Part shown: one piece after another, positions 395-48,679 of the stretch
Position numbering within the stretch: position 1 is the stretch's first letter
Layout: each line of letters begins with the position of its first letter
DNA from: Fimbriosthenelais zetlandica
Lineage: Eukaryota
DNA length: 64,000 nt
Assembly (NCBI GenBank): GCA_977030845.1
Contig: OZ365118.1
Coordinates: 16,306,001 to 16,370,000, forward strand
Direction: 5' to 3'
The notes under the pieces: model-generated
What the model was told of the DNA's origin: nothing
The model's input: the letters and a program-made list of their open reading frames with translations, nothing else
The model's database searches: none
Made by a program: the position numbers and the translations under genes

Positions 395-700
395 TCCATT
401 GATATGCAACTTGATAGCTAAAGTTGAATATTTATCATTTTAGTGTCATAAGCATCTAATTTTAACCCCCAGTTTCGGCGGCCATCTTGGATTTAGGCCC
501 AAGGTTGGACCCAGCGCAAGAAGGGTTCGAAGATTCGGGAGACAATCCTCAAAATATAGTATACCGAAAAATAAAATGGGCTGATGAAACACACAATAGA
601 GGGTACATACAACATTCTTAATTGTTGAAAGATGCATATAACAGAACATTTCATGGCCAGTTCTCACTAAGCAATTTAATCAAGAGATTCTTGTCATGAC
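395..700. mobile_element. Probable non-autonomous DNA-transposon (MITE-like) remnant
   Basis: Contains ttccattgatatgcaact and ggcggccatcttggattt, strings typical of MITE interiors; no TIR pair found. Confidence 0.3.
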
Positions 701-2304
701 CCTCATCAAATGACACATCCATACCTCTAATCTTACGAGGCAGAAAGCACTTCATGAAAAGCGGGATGAACATATTTTGTGGCCAGTAGAAGCGGTGATA
801 ATTCTAGCTGTCTCATTTTGGTGAGAGCAGGGGGCAAGTGGCTGTGGTTGGGGTATCAGTGAGAGCAGGCTGGCCCCCTGTGGAGACGATGATTGATACT
901 TTTCATCAAGCATAACTGGAGATCATTGCCCACTCTAAGCTCTCATCATTCAAGGTTTATCAAAATGGGAGGATGATGCTCTGAGGAGATCCCGGGCTTA
1001 GCATTGGTGTAATATAGCGAAATGAAATGCTTCCCCAATTTAGTACAGACGAGGACTTCCAAGGGCAAGGGAGTTGGCTTTTTATCCATTGTATGTCTCG
1101 TATGAGAATAAAAGATTAAAAAATGTACCAGAGAGAAGGTGAGCTTATGAGCATTTGCTTCAAGGACGTGGGTTTCATGGGTTCACAAAAGAAATCAACT
1201 GCATGGTCTGACAGTGTAGAAAGTTAGGAATGAGTAGTGACTTCCCAGAGATTTCCTTTCATTAGTTTCGAACCATTTCATTGAGCAATTTATTATATTT
1301 GCCCAGAAGTCATTTAGTGAATCCCAGAGCTAATCATTTACGTGAGAATCATTAAATTCCATGCATTTATCAAAACCAACATTCCCCCCAATAATTTACC
1401 AAACCAAAGCCAAAATTCAGCTCCCCCATTCTCAGAGCAATTCTATCCTGGGAATACTGAGAACAAGCAAAGCAAATATTTCTTGTTTAGCCAGTGATCC
1501 ACTGTGCTATGGAAAATCACAGAGTACTTGTCTGCATGGACAAAACGGATGCACAAGAACCTCGAGTATGCATTTTGCAAAATTAGAGATTTCATCAAAT
1601 ATTCAGTGGGAAAATGGGATAATGTTTCATAACGTTCCTAATCTGGTCACTAATGCTGCACCCTGAATCATCCGAGTGCTCATTGCCTATTACATGACAG
1701 GCGCAGGGTACATGTAAGAGAGATGCTTGTACTTTTTAGCTTAGTGCCCTGTTCTACCCTTTGATTCTCATCATTATAAGCAGGACAATGGGTGCCCTAT
1801 AGGATCACTGGGTGTAGATGGTAAGGGATCTAACATTGAATCATTTCGTGGGGGGTGTTTGATCCATGGAGAAAAGATAGAATGATCAGAGACAGTTTCT
1901 ACACTGGGAGGCATATGAGATGTCCCTCCAATAGGCAAGGCCATATTTGCAGAGTAGCATGGTACCCAAGGTCAAAGATAACAGGAGATGGAAGTTCATT
2001 TCTGTTTAGAAGATTAAACACAAACAGCTATAGTTTCTGTTAACAAACTGTTTCAAAATATATTGGCCACTTCTTTTCTCTTAATTGCAACAGGGGTAGT
2101 TTCCGTTTTCCGAAATCATTCTGTTCCTTTGACTGATATCAACAGTGGCTTGCTGATTAGGTAGGCAGATGAACATGGTTAAAGATCTTTTCTAACAGAT
2201 CCTGAGTCAATCTTCCGCATTGACCTTTTAACTCACCTCTATCTCTTACCCTTCCACCCGTCATATGTACCTACAGCAGACAAAGGTGTGTGAAATAAAG
2301 TGAG

Positions 2305-2420
2305 AGGCTGAAGAGGGAGAAGGGGATGAGATTGAGCCAGAGTGAGAGGAGAGAAGGGCCAGAGATGAAAGTCTGGGAGCCGAGTCATAGAGGGAGGGAG
2401 AGAGATGTCTAACAGAGACA
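2305..2420. repeat. Degenerate GA-rich tract
   Basis: Direct reading. Confidence 0.7.
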
Positions 2421-5400
2421 GTATAGCGGATCCAGGATTTCAGCAAAAGTTCAATGTGAGTTGGCCTATGCATGTCACTATGAGTATGGAAGTCCCTGCA
2501 TGTGAGCATGAACTTCCATGAACTGCTTGAGAAGTTCCATGAACTTTATCTCATTAAGTTTCACCCTTTGATCCAGTAATGAAAGCTAAGGAGACTACTC
2601 ATGTAAACGGGTCTGCATGTTGATAACAACAAATCAATGCCTCTATAAAGTCAGAGTAAGACATCTGACCTTGCCACAAGGTAAATAAATCCCCTAAAAA
2701 CTGGCCAGTTTGATTTCCCCTGGTAGAGTCACTCACATCAGCTCTTTGTACCTGAGACGCGGAGTTAAAGTGGAGCAGATACAATCAATAAGTGTATGGA
2801 GAGTGGGGCAAAATACACCCCTGAGTCTTTTGTTCTGGATTCTATGGAACGTCCCAGAAGACTTAAACTGCAGGTCGCTTCAAAAAGAATTACTAGTCAG
2901 TATCCAAGAGTTACAAGTTTCTTGATACATTTGTATACTTTCTTCGCCCACAAGTAACATTCGAGAAGGCCTGGACCCGCCGCCTTCTATCCCTCCGGTC
3001 TCAAATATTATCTAATTTGTCATCTTTTATGGTTCAGGTACTTTCAGATGTACCTTTCCTTCCTTGAGAACATTAAGAGGTAAAGAATGGAGGTCTTGGT
3101 TTGTAAACAGTATAAGGAGCCGCCAGACAGAGTGGTTGAATGCTTTATTGAAATGTGCATGATCTACTTGCATGTCTCAATACATTACCTGAGTGAGCAG
3201 ATCAGGTTATTATTAGACCACAACTGCTCCCCCTGCCGACCAAACAGTACAAAAATAGACGGCAAACATACTCCCTCCATCTAAGAATAGACTCTATACC
3301 ACTAACGTGACTTTCTTGCCATTAACTCATATCTGTCTTGGCCTTTGTGTAATTAATAATTTCAACATTTTCTTGGAATCTTATCTAAAGAACTGATGAA
3401 CATGGCTAGTCAGGTAGGAAGCAGTGTCACTAAGAATGTAATTTAAAATGCCCTAGGGCATTGGGAAAAGTTCGAATTTCAAGCATCCTGCAGTCTACTA
3501 TAGTGATTCAGAAATCCATTCCATCCGGTAGAGATGGAACCAGATATACTCTAATGACATTTCTAATTAAATACTAATATGCATTTAGAATCAAAATCTC
3601 AAAGTCTAACGAGTTGAGTTGATAAGAATCTAATGTGAGAGGCTCCAAATTCCAGGCTTTCCAGACACATTTCAATCAAATCAACGTATATACATATGTT
3701 TCAACCGAGTAAACAACTATATAAAAACAGGTTTACACGGATGGTAAAAGATCTGAGACTGCGTGATAGAGTAGGCCTACCTTTCTGAAGGGAGATCATT
3801 AGTTAGAAGGCTTGCCTCATCCAAGCCATTACTTAGAAGTTTCACTTCATCCATGCAATTTTCTAGAAGCCAGCAAGTGGGGGATTCAGACATCTGCTTC
3901 CTTTAATATCTGTTGCTTGTCTTTTGATTTGAAAATTACTTCTGTGAAGACATATAAAGAGATATATCACCTCTAGAGAAGGAATCTGAGGGATGATGAA
4001 TTTGCAGAGCCTTATATCCACTCAGCGATTTGGCAGTTTGATTAAGCAGTATAGGCTGGTTCTCTGGCATCATGCGGAAAACAACATTTGGAATTAGGTG
4101 ACTATGTAAAATGAACTGCCAAATTTAAGACTCAGTCATGTGGGGCACTTCTTCGAGAAGTGGTCAATAGAAAACTAGGTTGCAAGCATACATTGTGACT
4201 AGTATAAAATCGGTCTTTCGGAATAGCTTTACCTATGAAAGAGCAACTTTGAGCAGACATGAGCAGAAGTCTCCACAACACGAGCTGCTCTTGCTCTAAG
4301 AAGCAGAACAGGCTGCTATCTGATAGCCTTCCCACCCAAACAGAACCTCGCAGTTCTGTCCTGGCAGACCATGTCACACTTGCTTCTATGAAGTTAGAGG
4401 CAGGGTGTTTGTGGAGGGTTTTATGTGTTAGATATAGCTTTGCTTTGGCCTCAGAATGTCCTTAGTCATCGCATTAAAACCGTCCTCTGAAGCATTACCA
4501 TTTATCAAACCGCCTTCTCCTTACACTGTCTGCGAGTAGGAGCACTCTCAGACACAGCCACAGACGGTAAATTATAGGCCAATATAACTTGTCACTGCTA
4601 CAGCTTTTACACTTTTAAATGTGTTATCAGTATGAAAACAAGGCTTTGTTAGAAACGACAGGCATTGAGGCATCTTAACACTTACGAGTAAGATCCACAT
4701 TTACTCATATACTGCCCAACAAAGGAAGACAATTCTCACGTCTTCACAATAACAGGTTCCATTTCTCACTCCATCAATAAGTGGATTGTTCGTTTCATCA
4801 GAAGAAAACAATCTTCTCTTAAAACATTTCAGCTTTTCTTGCTGAGAACACTCTTCAACTAAAAGTGTTTGTGAACTGTTTTTTGAAAGGACACTTAAGT
4901 TCTCTTGATTTAAAACTGTGGAGCAACATGAGAATGGAGAATTCAAAGGGACACAGTGAGATTGGCTTTGAAAGGTACAGCCACACTCAAGCGATTTGAA
5001 CGACCGATTGCCTCAATGGGAACCCTTTCCTTATATCAAATACCAAGCACCGTTTCCACGATTGTTCAACATTCTTCCCAAAACATTTTCAAAATTTCTC
5101 ACTTTCCTTTACCGTCCAGTCCAGCTGACTGATATCAAAGGCCAGCCATGTCCTCTGCCTATGGCAAGAGGTATAGAGAAGATCAGTCAAATTATGTGCC
5201 GAAAGCGTGTTTCCTAATCGTCCTGAGCTCGTAGAAAAATTGCTGATTCGCTATTAAACAACTATTCATATTAACAGGGCACAAGTAGGACCCTGGTGCC
5301 GTTTTTTAAATACACATGTCAGAGATTTAAAGCAAGGTATGATATGATTTAAGAAAACAGGGGAATATTTGTGTGGGAAGGCTTCCACCTCACACCACTC

Positions 5401-39625: not shown

Positions 39626-40454
39626 CAGAGAAAATGAGAGAAAGGGGCAGAGCAAGCTTAAAAGGGTCATGTTTAAGAGACATGTTTTTGGAGGGGGCTA
39701 TTGGCCCCCGTTTACAGTTTAAATATTGACGTTTCAAGGCCGTTATTTAAACTGTTGCTCGTTGGCAGAACCATCTGTGCATTTTGTCCTCTGCTGTTGG
39801 TCGGGTCAGGGTCAGGGTGGGTGTATTGTTAATGTAGCGGGTCAGCTCTGCCCTCTGGAAGAGGGGGCTGTCTTCAGGAAGTAATATGATAGCTAGGCTA
39901 TTTACTTTTGGCACGGTCAGTTTTTGCTCTGGATCCTTATTGCCTTTTGTTGGTCAGTAAAGGCATTCTGGGGTAGCGACCCGTGCCAAAAATATCTGGT
40001 GTGACATGGACAGTCCCCCAGACCAACGTTTTCTCGTTATTTCTCAACCAACCTATATATCATAATTCTTGCAAGAATTATAACATGTTATAAATCACCA
40101 TTGATTCCATAAACGTATTGCTTTATGGCATGGCATTCGTTTGGGTCCCTAGGGTTTGAATCAGGATTTCTGTTGTTAGTTCCGTTACTTACTTTCCCTT
40201 TCTCATCCTTTCCTCGTTTGCTTCAAGCCTTGAAAAAGTAAATAGCCATAAAAGCCGTTGACAAAGGAGAGGAGCAACTGAAGGCTGATGAAGGGAACAA
40301 GGATAGAAACACTTGAGAGAAGAAGCACTGAAAAGATTGCCCCACTCCATATGTACCTCTAGAGGGATAGATAGAGCATCACAAAGGGATCTAAAAATAA
40401 ATAGTCTGTCAAAAGACCACATGGTGAATTGAATCTAGAGCCACGGAGAAAAAC

Positions 40455-40550
40455 TCTGTCTCAATCCCCCTCTCAACTGTATCTCTTTCTCTCCTCCACA
40501 TGTCTATCTGCTAGCTCTCTCCTTTCTCAGTATCTCTGTCACTCTCACTC

Positions 40551-40585
<35 letters not shown>
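40455..40585. repeat. CT-rich tract ending in a pure (CT)n run (~40554-40585)
   Basis: Direct reading. Confidence 0.95.
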
Positions 40586-40588
<3 letters not shown>

Positions 40589-40810
40589 CATGTGACTCTC
40601 GCTCACGAGATTGGCGTGTTTCTGCCGTGCACCAAGTCATTTTCACAGGGAAAAATATAGTAAAGAAATATAGAGAATTCAATAATAAAAATGCCTCAAG
40701 GTTAAAGTGCGGTATTTGGAAAATGCTAACCTTGGTCCCAGATTCATACCGAGATGATTGATGACTAAAAAAACAGTCATAAAGAAATAGTACAATATGG
40801 ACATGAAAAT

Positions 40811-40929
40811 TAATCAAAAATTAAGTTAAACTTACGTTAGTAATTTGAAGCTTAATTAGGATTATACAAGCCATATAGGCTTATGGGGGGGTCAGGTGAG
40901 AAGGCGCTGGTGCGTGTGTAAGAGGTCAG
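40811..40929 (-). repeat. Right ITR (40860-40929) plus 49-bp right extension (40811-40859) of the DIRS element
   Basis: Ends ...TTTTTGATTA on the - strand; its outer 88 bp are perfectly complementary to the ICR. Confidence 0.88.
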
Positions 40930-41080
40930 CATTTAATCATCCCGGAGAAGTGATCCTAACCAATTGGGTCAGGAATTTGTCAGTTTTATCCCCTACATCT
41001 AAAACTGAAATGTAGCTAGCTTCATACTAGCTATTTGGTCCCAAGTAGATCTATACTTGAGACGGGTAGGGTGAGGTGGG

Positions 41081-41207
41081 CACCTGACCCCCCCATAAGC
41101 CTATATGGCTTGTATAATCCTAATTAAGCTTCAAATTACTAACGTAAGTTTAACTTAATTTTTGATTATACTTCGCCCCATAGGCTACTAGGGGGCGACA
41201 GGTGAGA
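41081..41207 (+). repeat. Internal complementary region (ICR): the + strand reads as the circle junction (right end + left start overlapping at GATTA, 41164-41168)
   Basis: Exact match to both termini as listed for the element. Confidence 0.88.
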
Positions 41208-41479
41208 TTTTAACTTATTAGGGGAACTTCTCCGGGACTTCTACTATATGACATATAGATAGGTCCTAGTAGGAATAATTTTCCTCTTTTTCAGGATGAA
41301 TTTAACGAGGAACTCGACCTAGTGATTTTGTTCATCATAAAGTACTAGGTTTCTTTCAAATTATGAGCTTTAAGTTATCACTTATAATTGGAGTTGATAT
41401 TGATATCAATTGGGTTATCACTAGCTATCAGATCATCTTTATGATCATTAGTGATTTTATTTTAGGGAAGCAGTGGAGT

Positions 41480-41900
41480 TGGTCTTTATTTGGAAACTTG
41501 GGTTTCATTCATGCGAGCATGACCAAGCCTCCTGACATGATAGAACCTTTGTCCTTAAGCTTTCATGAGACGTTATGGAGATCAATTCTCCAATGTAGAG
41601 GTGTATCATAATTTAACTAATTACGAAAGCATTTGGACATGCAATATCTGTCTATAATATGGATATACTAGTATATATTGGACTATGCCAACACTTTTTT
41701 GCCTAAATATTTTAGGTCGACTCTACTTGTTTCACAGTACCGGTATTCATGGGAACACAAGTTCAAGGTTCACACAGATGTGTGGCTTTTTACAAGTAAT
41801 TGTGTCACCCTGAGCATCAATAAGGTATGGAAGAACTTTATGGCATCTTGTCATATCGTGTTCGAGTGAGGTAAAGCTGGAAGCACCTTCCAACTCTAGC
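41480..41900 (-). pseudogene. Possible tyrosine recombinase remnant
   Basis: FFHTLLMLRVTQLL (box I-like LR.SEL) near 41790-41840; SHESLR / YHVRRLG (H-x-x-R-like) near 41520-41570 in other frames; the position just before the ICR is as expected. Weak. Confidence 0.28.
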
Positions 41901-42118
41901 TTACACCTACTACCACGATTCCACAGTGTCTGTCCAGGACGTTTCGGATGCTCGCATGGTATTTAGATGAGGTACATATACAAGTACTGTTAATTTTTTG
42001 ACAGAGTCTTAGGCAGGGCGGACATTGTAAGGTGTGAGGGGCCAATGTCGTTATTACTGCAAGTATGAAGGAAATATACTGCGGCCAGAAATTACAACAG
42101 GCTGTGGTGGGAATTTGG

Positions 42119-42667
42119 TTAAAAGACATACAATTTTCTGTAGATGTATTGAGGACATGCCGGGAGATGTGAATGGATTATAGGGTCCTTGCGATTGGGG
42201 GATGATAACATTTTTTGACTTTTTAAGTCCCGTGATCTTAATTTTTTAGATCTAAAATATACGCTTTTGGACAATGGATAGTTGGATAAATTAGCCAGTT
42301 AAATAATCGAAATTTCGCCAGTAATATCGCCGGCAATGACGTCAGTAAACTTAAAACTTTTTAGGACCTTTTGGACCTTTTTAAGCGCTTAAATCTTTAC
42401 ATGCCGTGTGGGAACCCCGGAATAGTGAGTCATCCAGAAGTTTTGAAGTTTCTTAACTGGTCTTAAAGATGTTAGACCACAGGTAATTCTTCCAGCCCTG
42501 GTCGTTAGTCTTACTCGAATAGGGCAATTCCCCTTCTTTCGAATAGAAGACTTGCCTCAATCTCCAGTTTCGTCTGGAAACATTGAATTAAATTCTTGGT
42601 TTTCTTTGCTCACAGCTTATGTGGGGTTTTCATGGGAGTCAAAAATAAATGTAAACATGTCGTTTAT
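42119..42667 (-). pseudogene. Degenerate frame resembling the DIRS1 methyltransferase-like (MT) region
   Basis: 183 codons, 4 internal stops; DMFTFIFDSHEN...FNSMFPDE resembles the DLFAS..N....F.S..PD motif and lies downstream of RT as expected. Confidence 0.35.
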
Positions 42668-43633
42668 TTAATAGGAGGGAGAGCACAGTTTTATTATATG
42701 TTCCTGTGAATAAGTATTACTGATGGGGCCTCTTCACTGGGTAGACCTGGGAGATGATTACATTTTTGTGGTAGTCTTGAATGATGTTAGATTATTTAGG
42801 ATTACCGTGTAATCATAGCCAAAGTGGCTATAATTGGTTCTTCAGGTTCCAGGAGTATTCAGGTAAGAGGTATAGAAGGACTGATTCACTGGGTATATAG
42901 TGCTAAAGAGTGCCTTAGAATAACAAACATAGGGTCCTATGATGAGGACAGTTTCCCTGCGTGATAATCATTTACTATGATAAGGGATTTAGATTAAGTT
43001 TATAGGTTGCTGCCTAGGCAATGTTTCCAAAATAGGAAAATTAACATACTAGGATCTATATCAATTTGGCCAAGCTCATTTAGTTCAATACAGTGACATG
43101 TATAATCGATTTATATCGATACGTTTGACCGTTTGATCGTGAAGGTTTCACGAGGGAGTACCACTGTGGCTATTAGTGGTTTTATTTTACGTAAAAGGGT
43201 ATTCGGATAACGATTGGAGTATCAGTTTAGTTATCATTTCAAGGCTCGTCATTGAGTTAAATTTTGTCCTGTTTTCCCAGGAAAGTTTCCATAACTGACA
43301 AGTAATTGAGTAACTTTATATCCAATGTCAAGAAATAAGGCAGATTATAGTTGGATGAGTTGGGACAGAGGCGAGTCTGTACTATAATGTGGGTCTGCAG
43401 AACGACAGATAATACATTTTTTGATAGTAGGTTTCTGTTCAGGGTCTATTATGTTTTCTAGAAACACTTAGAAATGGTTCTGAATCATTCAGTGTTGTGT
43501 ACTTAAAAAAACCTACTCATCAAGCCTGAGCTTGAGTGTAATATTTGTCACTCGAGTTATACGTTAATTCACATCAATTTCTGAGGACTGATGGGGGTCT
43601 ACATTGTCTATATTCTCTGATGTCTAGTAAACG

Positions 43634-44371
43634 TCAAGATGAGATACGAATGGCCCAATGCATAGATGCATGCATGTCTAAGACATAAATCATAAAGACT
43701 TCATCTTCCAGACTTTGTAAAGAACGCTTCAGGTCAAAGCGTAACTTATAAGTTGATCTCTTTATTATAATTGTTACGAGTAGGGATTTCCGTGACCTAA
43801 TATAAGAAGACGTAGTGAATGAATGGTCATTGAGTCCCATGCCAGGCGATGAGGCTGTATTTATAGCGAGTAACGCTTGTGATATTGAAGGGGTAAACCC
43901 TTAGATCCCATGAGAGAAACTCAGTTTTAATTGGAGTATGACTGAAGTGGATGTCCTTAGACAGTAGAATAAATTAGTTATTCTATTGAATATACCAGTA
44001 AGTTTCACACTGAAATAATCAGGGCTTATATTACTTATGTCGCTAAACTCGATGTTCGATCTTGATTTTAAAGGGTCTGAGATACATTTACTGTCCACGT
44101 AAATACACTAAGCCACGACCCATAGACAGGGAGGACCTGTGAAGGGTTTAGGGAAAAGAGCGCCTTGTTTAAGACAAATGCTTAATGTAAGGAAAGTTTT
44201 TTGATGTAAACTTATATTGTATTGGACTATCTCGGAGTCCGTCTTAAGGTCCGCTTTTAATGGGCCCAAGAAAATCATTATTATTATTGTTCTTCTATAC
44301 GTGAGTATAAGTATGAGGGTGCTTCCTTCCAATATCTTGATATTAACCTCTAAAGAAAGGGAAAAATGGCG
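43634..44371 (-). pseudogene. Degenerate DIRS-type reverse transcriptase frame
   Basis: Three ORF-track ORFs (44108-44332, 43901-44098, 43634-43840) are one frame: 246 codons with only two internal stops in AT-rich DNA. Motif resemblances in order: EGSTLILIL (cf. DGS.R.ILDL), KADLKTD...SLHQKTFL (cf. K.DLKDAY...SHQKFL), KPFTGPP (cf. LPFG...P), CIYVDS (cf. YLDD, second Asp lost). By-eye alignment only. Confidence 0.6.
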
Positions 44372-44666
44372 TTAAGTTCTATGAAGGTTGCTGATTGTAA
44401 TTATATAGGGAACAGGACTGTAATTTCCGTCATATATCAGCCAACTTGTCTGGCGATTCGGACTTTGCTGGTAGGATCTCTCCTATCGGATTATCATACA
44501 GTTGTTGATCATCTTGTCCTATAATCGCGGTGGCTCGGGGGGTACCGCACAACTCCGGACACTGTCTGAGTGGCTGTGGGCACAGGGGTTAGACTGTGTT
44601 GAAAGGTAGTATTAGGTGAAAATGCAGTTTCTAAGTGACGTTTTCTTTAAGGAACCTGTTGATGTT

Positions 44667-44888
44667 GGTTTAATTTCTGTTAATTAATAGGATTAATTAC
44701 TAACTGTCCATAAATAAACCATCTCCAAGTATGGTTTAATTTCTGTTAATTAATTGGATTAATTACCAACTGTCCATAAGTAAACCATCTCCCTGTATGG
44801 TTTAATTTCTGTTAATTAATAGGATTAATTACCAACTGTCCACAATTAAACCATCTCCAAGTATGGTTTAATTTCTGTTAATTAATAG
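44667..44888. repeat. 66-bp tandem repeat x ~3.4 inside the DIRS element
   Basis: Units start at 44667, 44733, 44799 and 44865 (ggtttaatttctgttaattaataggattaattaccaactgtcc...aaaccatctccaagtat), with a few substitutions between units. Confidence 0.95.
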
Positions 44889-46012
44889 AATGAAATTCAG
44901 TAAACCATTCTCAGGTCAGTCTAATTAGGGAGTTGAGAAGAATCGTCCTAGGTATTGTAGGCCTATTGGAATAATAAGGCCGTAGTACAGCACATGTGGA
45001 GAAGGTAGCACTGTCTCCTGCATCGTCCGAGTCGAGGGTGTAGGTATAATTCGCTATCACAACTGCATAACAATGCTGCTCAATGATACGTAATTCACTG
45101 TAAAAAATGGATCATTTTGAAGGAATTTGTCTCATCTTACTGTTGGTACCTTTCTGTATATTGGGTACCTTCAGATGGTGGTCCTATGAATTTGTGTTTA
45201 GATATTCATATCTTTTATGGACGTAAATGTCCGAAATATATTATTGAATTGAAGTGAAATTGTTGCGACACCCTGTAAGTGAACGGTACCGGTACTATTT
45301 ATGTACCAATGGTCAACAAGGTGTTGAAGCGTGGTTACAGTCCGCTACTATACGGTTCTGTTATGTAACACAATCAATTCGACAACGAGGTCACAATGGC
45401 TGTCAACTTGTCCTTGAGTTCACAGTAATGTAGAGTGTGAAATACCAAAATGATATATACATAAACGGGTCTGGAAGTCAGGGCCCATTTAGAGATAGAA
45501 ATCCACTCTTTTAGTAGAGGGATGGTCACACATTTAATTTGTCGTAGTTATGGCTATTGCCATTTTTGTACAACACATTACCTTGAGGTTTTGGACTTCT
45601 CTCCTTCTCCTCCTGCGACTGTGATAAGAGGGAGCCAATCCTGCCAAGTAATTGACGGCAGAAGTCGGTCTATATTCTGCTAGCTGGAGCCAGAACATTT
45701 CATGGTGCAAGGTCAGTTATAGCCTTGCTTCACAGCGTTCTCTTCTTCATAGCCTAGCCTTTGGACTCTTACGAGTCAACGATAGTAACCCCGCGGTTAT
45801 ATCGCCCTTGTCTCAAAAAACACCCAACAAATGACAAGTGTCTCTCCCCGTCTCCAAAACCTTGAGAAGCTCGAAGGCAGGAGTTGTATAAATGTAGAAT
45901 AGGCTCTTGGGGAGAGCAAGGCATGGTTGGTACACCGTCGGTATAGTTGAAAGTATCCACGTCCATTGATGGCAATCAAAATGCGACCTGCTTGTTCCAC
46001 GAACTCAGCTAA

Positions 46013-46084
46013 CTGACCTCTTACACACGCACCAGCGCCTTCTCACCTGTCGCCCCCTAGTAGCCTATGGGGCGAAGTATAATC
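46013..46084 (-). repeat. Left inverted terminal repeat of the DIRS element (begins GATTATACTTCGCCCC on the - strand)
   Basis: Inner 37 bp identical to the right ITR; outer 35 bp homologous but different (gattatac...ataggct...ggggg shared). Confidence 0.88.
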
Positions 46085-46739
46085 CATATTCATACAGTGC
46101 TATAATATATACTAGTCTAATAAATGACAGTATACCTGTACAATTCAATATGCTTTCCCCTATATATTGATTCCTTTCAGATTCAGACAATACTTTCTTT
46201 TGAAAGGGAGTAGGCCTAGTCCATCAAGAGAGGAACCTTAGAGACCATGTCGTCTGTTTGGCCTTCCCACACTTGCTGTCCAATGCAATTATTCCCCAAT
46301 TAATACAGAGCTACAACCTGTCATTTACATGTAGTTGCATGTAATTTATGCCATTACAATAACCCTGTAATTAGGCTATCTATCTGACAGGTGTCCTTTA
46401 ACGTGATTCTCAAGGAAGGGGCGTGTGGACTTAACCTTTGTCCTCATGACAAATCCTATGTAAATTCATTATAATATAAAATACATCAGGTCTTTAAAAT
46501 GCTTCATTTTATCCACTGGCCTGGAAGATTGAATTCTTAAGGTACTTCGGCAGAAAGCCCATTAAAATACATCTCAATTCTAGGTTCACAAAATGGAGCC
46601 TTCAATAAATGGTTGACCTTTCCTTGTCAAAGCATTGCACAAATCTTGGGCATCAGGGAAAGGAATACACATCCCTCAAGAAAAGAACCCCCTCGGAGGT
46701 TTTTCCTACCCTGCAGCTATAATTAAAAGTCCTCATCAT

Positions 46740-46970
46740 TGCTGCGCATGCTCGACTGGTTCTGGATGCTGATTGGATAACCCCGCCTCCTGTCATATCC
46801 TCTAATACTATACTGATTACGTCACACCTTTGTGATCTTCCTCACCAAAGACGCACCAAATAGTGACGTCATACTATAATCTAATGATCCTGATGACAGT
46901 GTTGGGTTCTTGACCCGGAAGTTATTGGTAGTTCAAGCGGAAGGGAAAGGAATGGGCGGCGCTTTTTTGT
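46740..46970. promoter_or_regulatory. CpG-rich promoter-like motif cluster
   Basis: GCGCATGC, ATTGG x2, CCCCGCC, TTACGTCA, TGACGTCA, CCGGAAGT, GCGGAAG and GGGCGG within ~230 bp. Confidence 0.5.
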
Positions 46971-48679
46971 CTGCCGTTGTTTGTGTCGAGAGAGTAAATT
47001 ACAGACTTTGATGTTTGACACTTCGTAGTAATTATGTTGTTTGAATAACACATGTAATTACTTTTGTTCTGCAGCTCTCGACTTTTCGTATGAGCTTTTT
47101 CAGAACATACATGAAATTCCACCACACTTGGAGAGAACAAAATACTCATAAGAGTACATGAGAAATGCAGATAGAGGTATATATATATGTCCTGTGCAGT
47201 GATGTGAAGGGGTCAGGTCATAATTTAAATCTTATCTCAATTATCACGCCCCACCTCTTCCAAGGTCCAGCCATGTTCTTACTGACCCCACCCACATAAT
47301 TCAGACAGGATTTGTGTAATCCATACTTGCGTACACGCAATTTCTTGGGAAAGTCCTTCCGAAGTGCTTACAGAGCTCCGGAAAAATGTGTCCTCCAATG
47401 AAGTGCTTTTAAAATAATCCGGAATATGCCTTATTGAAAGACTATGAAAATGACATCAAGATTCCAACATGGTGTATTATAATAGAGCATGAGCGGATGG
47501 CGAGGTACAACAATTGGAAGGACTAAATTGTGATACACATTGTAGGTAAAACTTACGAACCAATATCCATGAAAGTCTTCATCTTTCACACATTCAGAAC
47601 TTCTGCGGCATCAAAAATTAAGCCCAGACGAAGAGAGCCAGTGAGAGAGATAAGTCCACTGGCAAAATAATGTGGACATTTAGAGAGAAATTCAATGAGA
47701 AGAATTATCTTAGTGCATTTGGATTAAGGAAAGAAGGATCGGTAAGAAGGAAAGCATGGGATTTTGGGCGGGTATGGGGATATATGGAGGATGTGTGTGG
47801 GATGATCCGCCTATAGAGCAGTACATGCATGGATGTCTTCCACTGTCAGGTGTGTACAGGTGCGTGTAAATAGAGACTAATACAAATTGACCCCAAAATC
47901 AGCGGGGCAGGAGGGCAGATAGTGTCCAGACCGCACGTAGCTGGGGACTTCCCTAATATTACAATATAAGACTTATGTGGCAGATATCTGGTCCCAAATG
48001 GATTTTTTTCCGATGAAAAAATTGTGTTTCAATGAAAAAAATCGAATGAGTATGTTTGACCATGCATACACCTATAGACAATTCCCAAGCGTGTCTTAAG
48101 CAAAATGGAGATATCTCTCTCAAATTTAATCGCATCTTGACCCATCCAACATAATTTAAAGCTACATGGATGAAGCCTATAGAGATTGGGACAGAGCAAT
48201 TATAATTATTATCGTTCAAAAGAAAACGGGGTGGCGATACAAGTTGTTGATTAGTGGGTAAGGGTGGTTGTGATGGGGTATCTACGTCTAAATCTCATTG
48301 TTTAAGTTGTAATAACCTGCCATGTCTGGCTACACCAGGAATGTTGTCCCCTCTCTCTCTATGCCTACTATACAACTTAAGATTGGTTTTAATGACTTTA
48401 ATTACAATGAGTCGTATTCTTTGATCGCTTCTTCTTGTGAAGAATGTCAAACGCTTACTGCATTCAAAGTAAGTTCATTAATTTCCTGAGGGGTCAAGAA
48501 ATGTATAATCATTCCTTTTGTTAGTTTTCAGAATGTGTATGTCTAATTATAATTTGCATAATTGTTTTGCACACCTGTGATGATTTTAAGGATTTGAGTC
48601 AAGAACTTAAAGTTCTACCATAGATGTGTTGCAAGGGGAAAAGTGTGATCGAAATGGATCTCATTATTTCGTAAAGAGG

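What the first reader, a model, noticed from the sequence alone, without database searches (positions are those of the whole stretch)
40811..46084. Hidden DIRS1-type retroelement revealed only by its terminal geometry
No ORF in the track identifies this element. Three perfect reverse-complement matches (88, 44 and 37 bp) assemble into the DIRS1 layout on the - strand: lITR, body, ICR, rITR plus extension. The ICR (41081-41207) is exactly the complement of the junction a circular intermediate would form. That DIRS elements have this layout and integrate through a tyrosine recombinase is established. Residual RT-, MT- and YR-like frames lie in the expected order. The proteins are so diverged that this may be an unannotated family; I cannot check that.
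Basis: partly seen in the sequence, partly recalled or inferred. Interest (0 to 1): 0.75.

Follow-up and report, generated by a model that had tools for sequence, protein, structure and literature searches.

The report
Gene-less DIRS1-type retroelement family
This is one of roughly 25-30 near-identical copies of a 5.3-kb mobile element that has the end structure of DIRS1-type retrotransposons but no genes, so it must borrow its enzymes, most likely from a single intact relative elsewhere in the genome; it is a clean example of a known kind of element, not a new kind.

Summary
Window 40811-46084 (sense on the - strand) has the full DIRS1 layout: left ITR, body, ICR, right ITR plus a 48-nt extension. 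The ICR is the exact complement of the joined ends.

It is a real, young, multi-copy element: at least 25 copies on 12 or more contigs share the same ends, have unrelated flanks and show no target-site duplication. Most differ from this copy by 0.25-1.3%.

Open frames are no longer than in shuffled sequence. Pfam, a DIRS Pol profile and tblastn with the cognate proteins all find nothing.

One intact DIRS1-like element on contig C23 encodes a 1111-aa gag-RT-RH-MT protein and a 395-aa tyrosine recombinase. It shares only the first ~307 nt (nt 2-52 identical) and the last 469 nt (93%) with this element. The 4.5-kb body is unrelated to it.

An older 5.33-kb sister family has the same geometry. It shares part of the non-coding body and still carries a decayed recombinase gene.

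Best reading: a non-autonomous DIRS1-like family mobilised in trans. Chlamydomonas TOC1 and Dictyostelium helper/donor experiments are precedents.

The scan read this same stretch before (s1-228851) and noted other non-autonomous YR retroelements elsewhere in this genome.

The parts
40811..46084 (-). Whole non-autonomous DIRS1-like element (5274 nt). Element coordinate p = 46085 - window coordinate.
   Evidence: Nine copies match nearly end to end (element 1-3 to 5271-5274, one ending at 5188) at 98-100%, and further length variants share the same ends. Flanks are unrelated.
46013..46084 (-). Left terminus / left ITR (element 1-72). The first 44 nt are complementary to the left ICR. Element 28-72 is the conserved ITR part.
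   Evidence: Element 2-52 is identical to the C23 autonomous element.
45778..46083 (-). 5' region homologous to the 5' UTR and ORF1 start region of the autonomous partner (element 2-307, 67% overall).
   Evidence: blastn E 9e-32; alignment.
44666..44888 (.). 66-bp tandem repeat, 3.4 units here; the unit number varies among copies.
42432..45514 (-). Body part X (element 571-3653). It is non-coding and shared, collinear, with sister family 2. It is not found elsewhere in the genome.
   Evidence: nhmmer family-2 profile against the element, E 1e-41 to 2e-4. In the genome search all 33 candidates were scored and all lie in the two families.
41280..42431 (-). Body part Y (element 3654-4805). It is non-coding and has no detectable relative except an embedded interspersed repeat.
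42178..42399 (.). About 220-nt interspersed repeat embedded in Y. It has hundreds of dispersed copies at 76-82% on both strands.
   Evidence: 447 first-look candidates. No terminal inverted repeats.
40811..41279 (-). 3' cis block (element 4806-5274), 93% identical to the autonomous partner.
   Evidence: It is also the best-conserved part between subfamilies: 96.8% against 92-93.5% for the body.
41218..41237 (-). Upstream arm of a short inverted repeat that brackets the ICR and spacer. It is conserved in the partner and in family 2.
   Evidence: I4; alignment.
41164..41207 (-). Left ICR (element 4878-4921), the exact complement of element 1-44.
   Evidence: I2.
41081..41168 (-). Right ICR (element 4917-5004), the exact complement of element 5187-5274. 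It overlaps the left ICR by GATTA (canonical junction AAT/ATT).
   Evidence: I1. Perfect 88/88 in 18 of 26 rows (a few loci appear twice).
40940..40959 (-). Downstream arm of the bracketing inverted repeat.
   Evidence: I4.
40859..40929 (-). Right ITR (element 5156-5226), 86% complementary to the left ITR.
   Evidence: (I3).
40811..40858 (-). Right extension (rE, 48 nt), complementary only to the right ICR.
   Evidence: The size matches mollusc-type DIRS1-like elements in PMC3266345 Table 3.

Best explanation
This is a non-autonomous DIRS1-like retrotransposon: a 5.27-kb RNA-copied element that keeps only the cis-acting ends of a DIRS1-like element. Those ends are about 300 nt at the 5' end, of which the first 52 are strictly conserved, and 469 nt at the 3' end holding the ICR, spacer, right ITR and extension. 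They flank a 4.5-kb non-coding body. It encodes nothing and is propagated in trans by the gag/RT-RNaseH-MT and tyrosine recombinase of an autonomous relative. The best candidate is the single intact copy at C23:2786215-2791598. Inferred cycle: a transcript is made from the left end; the helper's RT copies it; the ICR acts as a splint that pairs with both termini of the single-stranded copy (44 + 88 nt) and defines the end-to-end junction; the helper's recombinase then recombines the ATT junction with an (A/G)ATTA-like target, leaving no target-site duplication. Shown here: the geometry, the copy number and youth, the identical ends, the absence of TSDs, the absence of coding capacity, homology of the termini only to an RT+YR element, and ICR/terminus complementarity that holds through sequence change. 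Inferred: transcription, trans-complementation, the identity of the helper and current activity.
For: Geometry. Copies: at least 25 with the same ends on contigs C1, C10, C11, C13, C14, C19, C21, C25, C27, C33, C37 and C38. Divergence from the window copy is 0.25-0.4% for 13 copies, about 1.2% for 6, 2.8% for one and roughly 5-8% for older subfamilies. Junctions: the flanks are all different and there is no TSD. The left trinucleotide is NTT (mostly ATT, also TTT and GTT). At the right junction the element's own GATT is followed by A in all but three copies. No genes. Helper: ORF1 of 1111 aa with RVT_1 at E 6.5e-18 and a weak MT-like hit, ORF2 of 395 aa with Phage_integrase at E 6e-8, and an R..HxxR..Y pattern visible. 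888 DIRS-type Pol relatives in public data carry RT/RNaseH/Dam-MT domains. The helper is single-copy; the next Pol reaches at most 47% aa over its RT-RH-MT part, and the nearest relatives are broken fragments (gag region 52%, YR 65-67%). Only the termini are shared: element 2-307 and 4806-5274. The element differs from the helper at 3 positions of the right terminus; two are visibly mirrored in each element's own ICR, a G/C swap and a 1-nt indel. Family 2 differs from this element at 17 of 90 positions in the right terminus and 8 of 44 in the left, yet each family's ICR is the exact complement of its own termini. The body has the helper-like A-rich, G-poor sense-strand composition, unlike the host background. 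[quoted passage not shown]
Against: There is no direct evidence of transcription or mobilisation: no sequencing run was listed and no empty site exists in the assembly. The candidate helper is not identical at the ends: the 5' homology decays after nt 52 and the 3' block is 93% identical. It is a single copy, so the true helper could be another DIRS family in this genome, several of which have uninterrupted Pol and YR frames, or one missing from the assembly. The origin of body parts X and Y is unknown.
Confidence: 0.8

Rival explanations
1. These are decayed copies of a once-autonomous DIRS1-like element whose RT, MT and YR genes are still faintly present.
For: Total length (5274 nt) is close to the autonomous partner's (about 5385 nt). 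Sister family 2 does retain a decayed MT C-terminus and YR in collinear positions (tblastn E 6e-7 and 1e-3; nhmmer E 1e-68), so the lineage did start from a coding element. Sense-strand composition resembles the partner's.
Against: No protein or DNA remnant is detectable in this family. Copies are 99.6-99.75% identical to each other and all share the ORF-less body, so amplification followed the loss of coding capacity. In family 2 the YR region is still 62-66% identical to the partner, but the region where gag-RT-RH should lie (X) shows no homology at all. That argues for replacement rather than uniform decay.
Confidence: 0.08
2. This is a DNA-level mobile element moved by a tyrosine recombinase alone (Crypton-like excision and integration of a double-stranded circle), without reverse transcription.
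For: Integration without TSD at a short homologous core is also what Cryptons do. Cryptons exist in this genome according to unchecked scan notes.
Against: The ITR + ICR + extension architecture is specific to DIRS1-like retroelements and is needed for their RT-based cycle (PMC7192593). The termini are homologous to an element encoding RT-RH-MT as well as YR. The strand-asymmetric composition is typical of retroelements. Copy number increased, which points to replicative spread.
Confidence: 0.05
3. This is not a transposon: a segmental duplication, a foldback structure next to another repeat, or an assembly artefact.
For: None beyond the presence of inverted repeats.
Against: There are at least 25 copies with base-identical ends and unrelated, mostly unique flanks on many contigs. 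Two sequence-diverged families keep the same geometry.
Confidence: 0.02

Closest known systems
DIRS1-like retrotransposons of lophotrochozoans (AcaDIRS1/2 of Aplysia, LgDIRS1/3 of Lottia; Piednoel et al. 2011, PMC3266345)
   Same: The terminal architecture is the same: ATT at both ends, an AAT junction in the ICR, a right extension of 48 nt, ICR halves of about 44 and 88 nt, a short ITR split into divergent and conserved parts, no TSD, and a total size near 5.2-5.8 kb.
   Different: Those elements encode gag, RT-RH-MT and YR. This one encodes nothing, and its 4.5-kb interior is unrelated to any DIRS coding sequence.
TOC1 of Chlamydomonas reinhardtii, called a non-autonomous DIRS retrotransposon in PMC9940879
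   Same: It is a non-autonomous member of the DIRS order, and the same genome holds protein-coding DIRS elements such as TOC3. From my own knowledge, unchecked: TOC1 is about 5.7 kb, lacks long ORFs, and TOC3 is its presumed helper relative.
   Different: From my own knowledge, unchecked: TOC1 has split direct repeats (PAT-like termini), not ITR + ICR. It is a green-alga element, and there is no sequence relation.
Engineered trDIRS-1 donor constructs in Dictyostelium (Malicki et al. 2020, PMC7192593)
   Same: A DIRS element lacking gag/RT/RNase H coding capacity is mobilised by endogenous proteins in trans and needs its ICR. That is the mechanism proposed here.
   Different: It is an artificial construct in an amoebozoan. 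Here a natural family has apparently done this for a long time, given two diverged families.
LARDs and TRIMs (non-autonomous LTR retrotransposons)
   Same: The logic is the same: large or small ORF-less interiors between conserved cis-acting ends, parasitising an autonomous partner.
   Different: They have direct LTRs, DDE integrase and TSDs. This element has ITR/ICR ends, a tyrosine recombinase helper and no TSD.

Membership tests
DIRS1-like retrotransposon (structural definition) | Inverted terminal repeats | tested here: met
   Element 1-72 pairs with 5156-5226 at 86%, with a core of 45 nt at 96%.
DIRS1-like retrotransposon (structural definition) | An ICR near the 3' end whose 5' half complements the start of the left terminus and whose 3' half complements the end of the right terminus and extension | tested here: met
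   44 nt and 88 nt, both 100%. The 88-nt pair is perfect in 18 of 26 rows.
DIRS1-like retrotransposon (structural definition) | A 3-bp circular junction, with the element beginning and ending in the same NTT trinucleotide | tested here: met
   ATT...ATT, with AAT at the overlap of the two ICR halves. This is the commonest type in PMC3266345.
DIRS1-like retrotransposon (structural definition) | No target-site duplication | tested here: met
   14 loci with both junctions read and 16 more with one show no duplication beyond the ATT(A) core.
DIRS1-like retrotransposon (autonomous member) | Encodes RT/RNase H/methyltransferase and a tyrosine recombinase | tested here: not met
   No ORF and no remnant. 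The feature is met by the partner on C23.
Non-autonomous retroelement mobilised in trans | Lacks coding capacity but shares cis-acting termini with an autonomous element in the same genome | tested here: met
   Element 2-52 is identical and 4806-5274 is 93% identical to the C23 element; the body is unrelated.
Non-autonomous retroelement mobilised in trans | Amplified after loss of the genes | tested here: met
   All copies share the ORF-less body at 96.5-100% pairwise identity, 99.5% at the median.
Non-autonomous retroelement mobilised in trans | Demonstrated mobilisation by the helper's proteins, and an RNA intermediate | not testable with these tools
   No sequencing run was listed. Support comes only by analogy with Dictyostelium (PMC7192593).

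The most novel reading that the evidence does not exclude
The ORF-less lineage may be old and self-sustaining rather than a one-off deletion derivative. Two families are only about 64-70% identical, yet both keep the shared non-coding body part X and a total length (5.27 and 5.33 kb) close to the helper's 5.38 kb. They outnumber the helper by about 30 to 1. That would imply a length constraint or an internal cis requirement, such as packaging or splint-mediated end joining, in DIRS replication, with X carrying a function of its own.
Probability: 0.15. Interest if true: 0.6.

Novelty: new member of a known kind. Interest (0 to 1): 0.4.

Why it matters
Reported DIRS elements are mostly found through their proteins. 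The main survey of DIRS1-like elements screened with RT, MT and YR profiles and left out degenerate copies (PMC3266345). A gene-less family like this is invisible to such screens and was found here only by its geometry.

It offers a natural deletion map of what a DIRS1-like element needs in cis: at most about 300 nt at the 5' end, with 52 nt strictly kept, and 469 nt at the 3' end. It also offers a helper/parasite pair with a single-copy helper and junction data on where strand exchange occurs. The left trinucleotide follows the target and the right one follows the element.

In my paper searches, TOC1 was the only element explicitly called a non-autonomous DIRS. Conceptually, though, this is the expected DIRS counterpart of LARDs, so it refines rather than changes the picture.

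Tried and rejected
1. Alternative genetic codes: frames free of one or two stop types are no longer than in shuffles.
2. Pfam on the 20 longest stop-to-stop frames of both strands gave only noise, E >= 0.03.
3. tblastn with the partner's Pol and YR, and with the RT/YR of a nested element, gave nothing in this element.
4. A Pol HMM built from 61 DIRS Pol sequences, run on six-frame translations with X at stops, hit the partner as positive control at 1e-275. This element scored no better than 20 shuffles.
5. DNA profiles: a YR-region profile (family 2 plus partner) against this element hit only the 3' block. A profile of body part X against the partner gave nothing.
6. Rfam and tRNA scans of the element gave nothing credible.
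7. Empty-site search with 600 nt of each flank found only the flanks themselves.
8. Sequencing runs for expression, circle junctions or polymorphism: none was listed.
10. PDB sequence search with the helper's YR gave no hit.
11. G-to-A hypermutation as the cause of the unrecognisable body was rejected. The sense strand is G-poor, but editing alone could not erase DNA homology.

The profiles were used for searching only.
Full report
**1. The observation**

In window 40000-47000, the repeat finder reports three relevant inverted pairs:
- 40811-40898 / 41081-41168: 88 nt, 100%.
- 41164-41207 / 46041-46084: 44 nt, 100%.
- 40885-40929 / 46013-46057: 45 nt, 96%.

I read the element on the - strand, with element coordinate p = 46085 - window coordinate. 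This gives:
- a left terminus (1-72);
- an ICR (4878-5004) whose first 44 nt complement positions 1-44 and whose last 88 nt complement positions 5187-5274;
- a right ITR (5156-5226, 86% complementary to the left one);
- a 48-nt right extension (5227-5274).

The two ICR halves overlap by GATTA. As single-stranded DNA the 3' block folds into the 88-bp hairpin with z = -22.5.

**2. It is a real, young, multi-copy element**

The window's genome is 447 Mb in 79 contigs, and the window is C37:16306001-16370000.
- The whole element finds nine copies that match nearly end to end at 98-100% (one stops at 5188), plus many length variants with the same ends.
- A 430-nt 3' probe finds 25 places at 97% or more and 5 at 89-95%.
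- A 300-nt 5' probe finds 22 at 99% or more.
- The copies lie on C1, C10, C11, C13, C14, C19, C21, C25, C27, C33, C37 and C38.
- Over element 2000-4800, 13 copies differ from the window copy by 0.25-0.4%, six by about 1.2% and one by 2.8%. Older subfamilies differ by roughly 5-8%.
- In those older copies the last kilobase is better conserved (96.8%) than the body (92-93.5%).
- The 88-nt terminus/ICR pair is perfect in 18 of the 26 rows (a few loci appear twice).

**3. The junctions**

The flanks are unrelated among copies and there is no target-site duplication.
- The left junction reads flank, then (A/G), then NTT, then ATACTTCG. NTT is ATT in most copies but TTT or GTT in four.
- The right junction reads TTTTTG-ATT-A in all but three copies and is usually followed by a further A.
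- This is the published DIRS1-like pattern: the element begins and ends with the same NTT (most often ATT), the ICR holds one AAT, and integration is by recombination with an identical 3-bp target without a TSD (PMC3266345).
- The terminal metrics here are rE 48 nt, ICR halves of 44 and 88 nt, and a short ITR split into a divergent and a conserved part. They match the Aplysia and Lottia elements of that paper's Table 3.
- The left trinucleotide varies and the right one does not. This suggests that the left copy comes from the target and the right copy from the element.
- The inferred target preference is (A/G)ATTA(A).
- The flanks of the window copy are unique, so the assembly holds no empty site.

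**4. There are no genes in it**

- No ORF exceeds 101 aa on either strand. The mean longest frame in shuffles is 108.5 aa, and alternative stop-codon sets do not help.
- The 20 longest stop-to-stop frames have no Pfam hit better than E 0.03.
- A profile built from 61 DIRS Pol proteins recovers the autonomous partner at 1e-275. It scores this element no better than 20 shuffles.
- Rfam and tRNA scans are empty.

**5. The autonomous partner**

One place with related termini, C23:2786215-2791598 (locus L037, - strand, about 5385 nt), carries two overlapping open frames.
- ORF1 is 1111 aa, with RVT_1 at E 6.5e-18 and a weak PCIF1_WW methyltransferase-like hit.
- ORF2 is 395 aa, with Phage_integrase at E 6e-8 and an N-terminal SAM-like domain. 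An R..HxxR..Y pattern is visible in its translation.
- The RT-to-MT part of ORF1 has 888 relatives in public data (best 52% identity). Many carry RT, RNase H and Dam-type MT domains, so it is a typical DIRS Pol.
- In this genome the partner is single-copy. The next Pol reaches at most 47% aa identity over the RT-RH-MT part. The next intact YR reaches 43%, and the closest relatives are broken fragments: 52% in the gag region and 65-67% in YR (105 of 125 YR candidates were scored).

blastn between the two elements finds only element 2-307 (67%; the first 100 nt at 90%) and element 4806-5274 (93%). The 4.5-kb interior is unrelated. In the alignment, element 2-52 is identical to the partner. The right terminus differs from the partner's at 3 positions. 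Two are visibly mirrored in each element's own ICR: a G/C swap and a 1-nt indel. A short inverted repeat that brackets the ICR and spacer (41218-41237 / 40940-40959) is conserved in both arms in all three elements compared.

**6. A sister family shows where the lineage came from**

Termini about 70% identical led to a second family (L033 3169-8495, 5327 nt). It has five full copies that are 92-97% alike, plus fragments.
- It has the same geometry, 44 + 90 nt, both perfect.
- It differs from this element at 17 of 90 right-terminus positions and 8 of 44 left-terminus positions. Each family's ICR nevertheless complements its own termini exactly. Complementarity is therefore maintained or regenerated through sequence change, as expected if the ICR serves as a template or splint.
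- Family 2 has no frame longer than 122 aa. It does keep a decayed methyltransferase C-terminus (tblastn E 6e-7) and two recombinase fragments (E 1e-3), in the right order and position.
- Its DNA profile aligns with the partner from the recombinase gene to the 3' end (E 1e-68). Identity is 62-66% in the gene and 74-79% in the termini.
- The same profile aligns, collinearly, with element 571-3653 of this family (E 2e-4 to 1e-41). I call this shared part X.
- X has no detectable homology with the partner's gag-RT-RH, even with a profile. It occurs nowhere else in the genome: 33 of 33 candidates were scored and all lie in the two families.
- Part Y of this element (3654-4805) matches neither family 2 nor the partner. 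It holds a roughly 220-nt interspersed repeat with hundreds of dispersed copies.

The most economical history has four steps:
- An autonomous DIRS1-like element lost gag-RT-RH, which was replaced by X.
- Its recombinase then decayed, which is the family 2 state.
- In the line leading to this family, that part was replaced or eroded beyond recognition (Y).
- Tandem repeats and a small repeat were acquired along the way.

The body's sense strand is A-rich and G-poor like the partner's and unlike the host background. This argues against a recent capture of host DNA.

**7. Mechanism**

The geometry and the literature fit one model. In Dictyostelium the ICR is essential for retrotransposition. The intermediates there are mostly linear single-stranded cDNA. 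[quoted passage not shown]

Here an ORF-less RNA would be copied by the helper's RT. The ICR would pair with both ends of the single strand and so set the ATT junction. The helper's recombinase would then insert the product at an ATT(A) target. These steps are inferred and none could be tested, because no sequencing run was listed.

**8. Comparison and novelty**

Structurally this element meets every test for a DIRS1-like element except coding capacity. It is best filed as a non-autonomous DIRS1-like family.

Non-autonomous members of the DIRS order are known. TOC1 of Chlamydomonas is called exactly that in PMC9940879. From my own knowledge, TOC1 has split direct repeats rather than ITR + ICR. 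Phrase searches for non-autonomous DIRS or Ngaro elements returned only that case. Repbase and Dfam could not be checked.

I rate it a new member of a known kind, of moderate interest. It is a clean helper/parasite pair, a natural map of the cis requirements, and a reminder that protein-based DIRS screens miss such families.

The scan has read this same stretch before as a "full-size non-autonomous YR retroelement" (s1-228851). It has also noted other non-autonomous YR retroelements elsewhere in this genome (s1-214061, s1-203932). Another note calls the host a probable annelid (s1-193440, unchecked). The termini metrics fit a lophotrochozoan.

Noticed in passing
L036:4865-9401 (C27:7154864-7159400), inside another copy of this family: A different YR retroelement of about 4.5 kb sits on the opposite strand. 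It has frames of 328, 406 (RVT_1), 182 and 343 aa (Phage_integrase). It is inserted in the 66-bp tandem-repeat region of a family copy. Copies at C27:5171883-5184673 and C11:30196661-30211111 also carry large insertions.
   Followed up: partly
window 42178-42399: An interspersed repeat of about 220 nt with no terminal inverted repeats has hundreds of dispersed genomic copies at 76-82% on both strands. It is embedded in the element's body and so is carried along with it. Its class was not determined.
   Followed up: partly
window 44666-44888: A 66-bp tandem repeat has 3.4 units here. The unit number and neighbouring duplications differ between subfamilies. It is the main source of length variation among copies.
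   Followed up: partly
L033:3169-8495 and four sister loci (L034, L035, L038, L039): A second, older ORF-less DIRS1-like family (5327 nt, 5 full copies) has perfect 44 + 90 nt ICR/terminus pairs and a decayed recombinase gene.
   Followed up: yes
G000 C13:13361281-13418215: Several DIRS Pol/YR hits recur with identical scores at about 7.9-kb spacing, in two blocks 23.1 kb apart. This looks like a tandemly duplicated DIRS-containing array. DIRS hits are also dense in C11:28-32 Mb and C27:5-8.6 Mb.
   Followed up: no
window 40940-40959 and 41218-41237: A short inverted repeat (core TCCCGGAGAAG / CTTCTCCGGGA) brackets the ICR and spacer. Both arms are conserved in this family, in family 2 and in the autonomous partner. 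It may be a further cis-acting stem. The arms are nearly invariant, so covariation gives no test.
   Followed up: partly
window 40515-40585: A CT dinucleotide microsatellite (36 units, 75% matches) lies in the flank next to the element's 3' end.
   Followed up: no
L003 and L037, 5' flanks: Two insertions, a family copy on C33 and the autonomous partner on C23, sit in flanks that share a palindromic motif (AAATCCAAGATGGC). They may have landed in the same unidentified repeat family.
   Followed up: no
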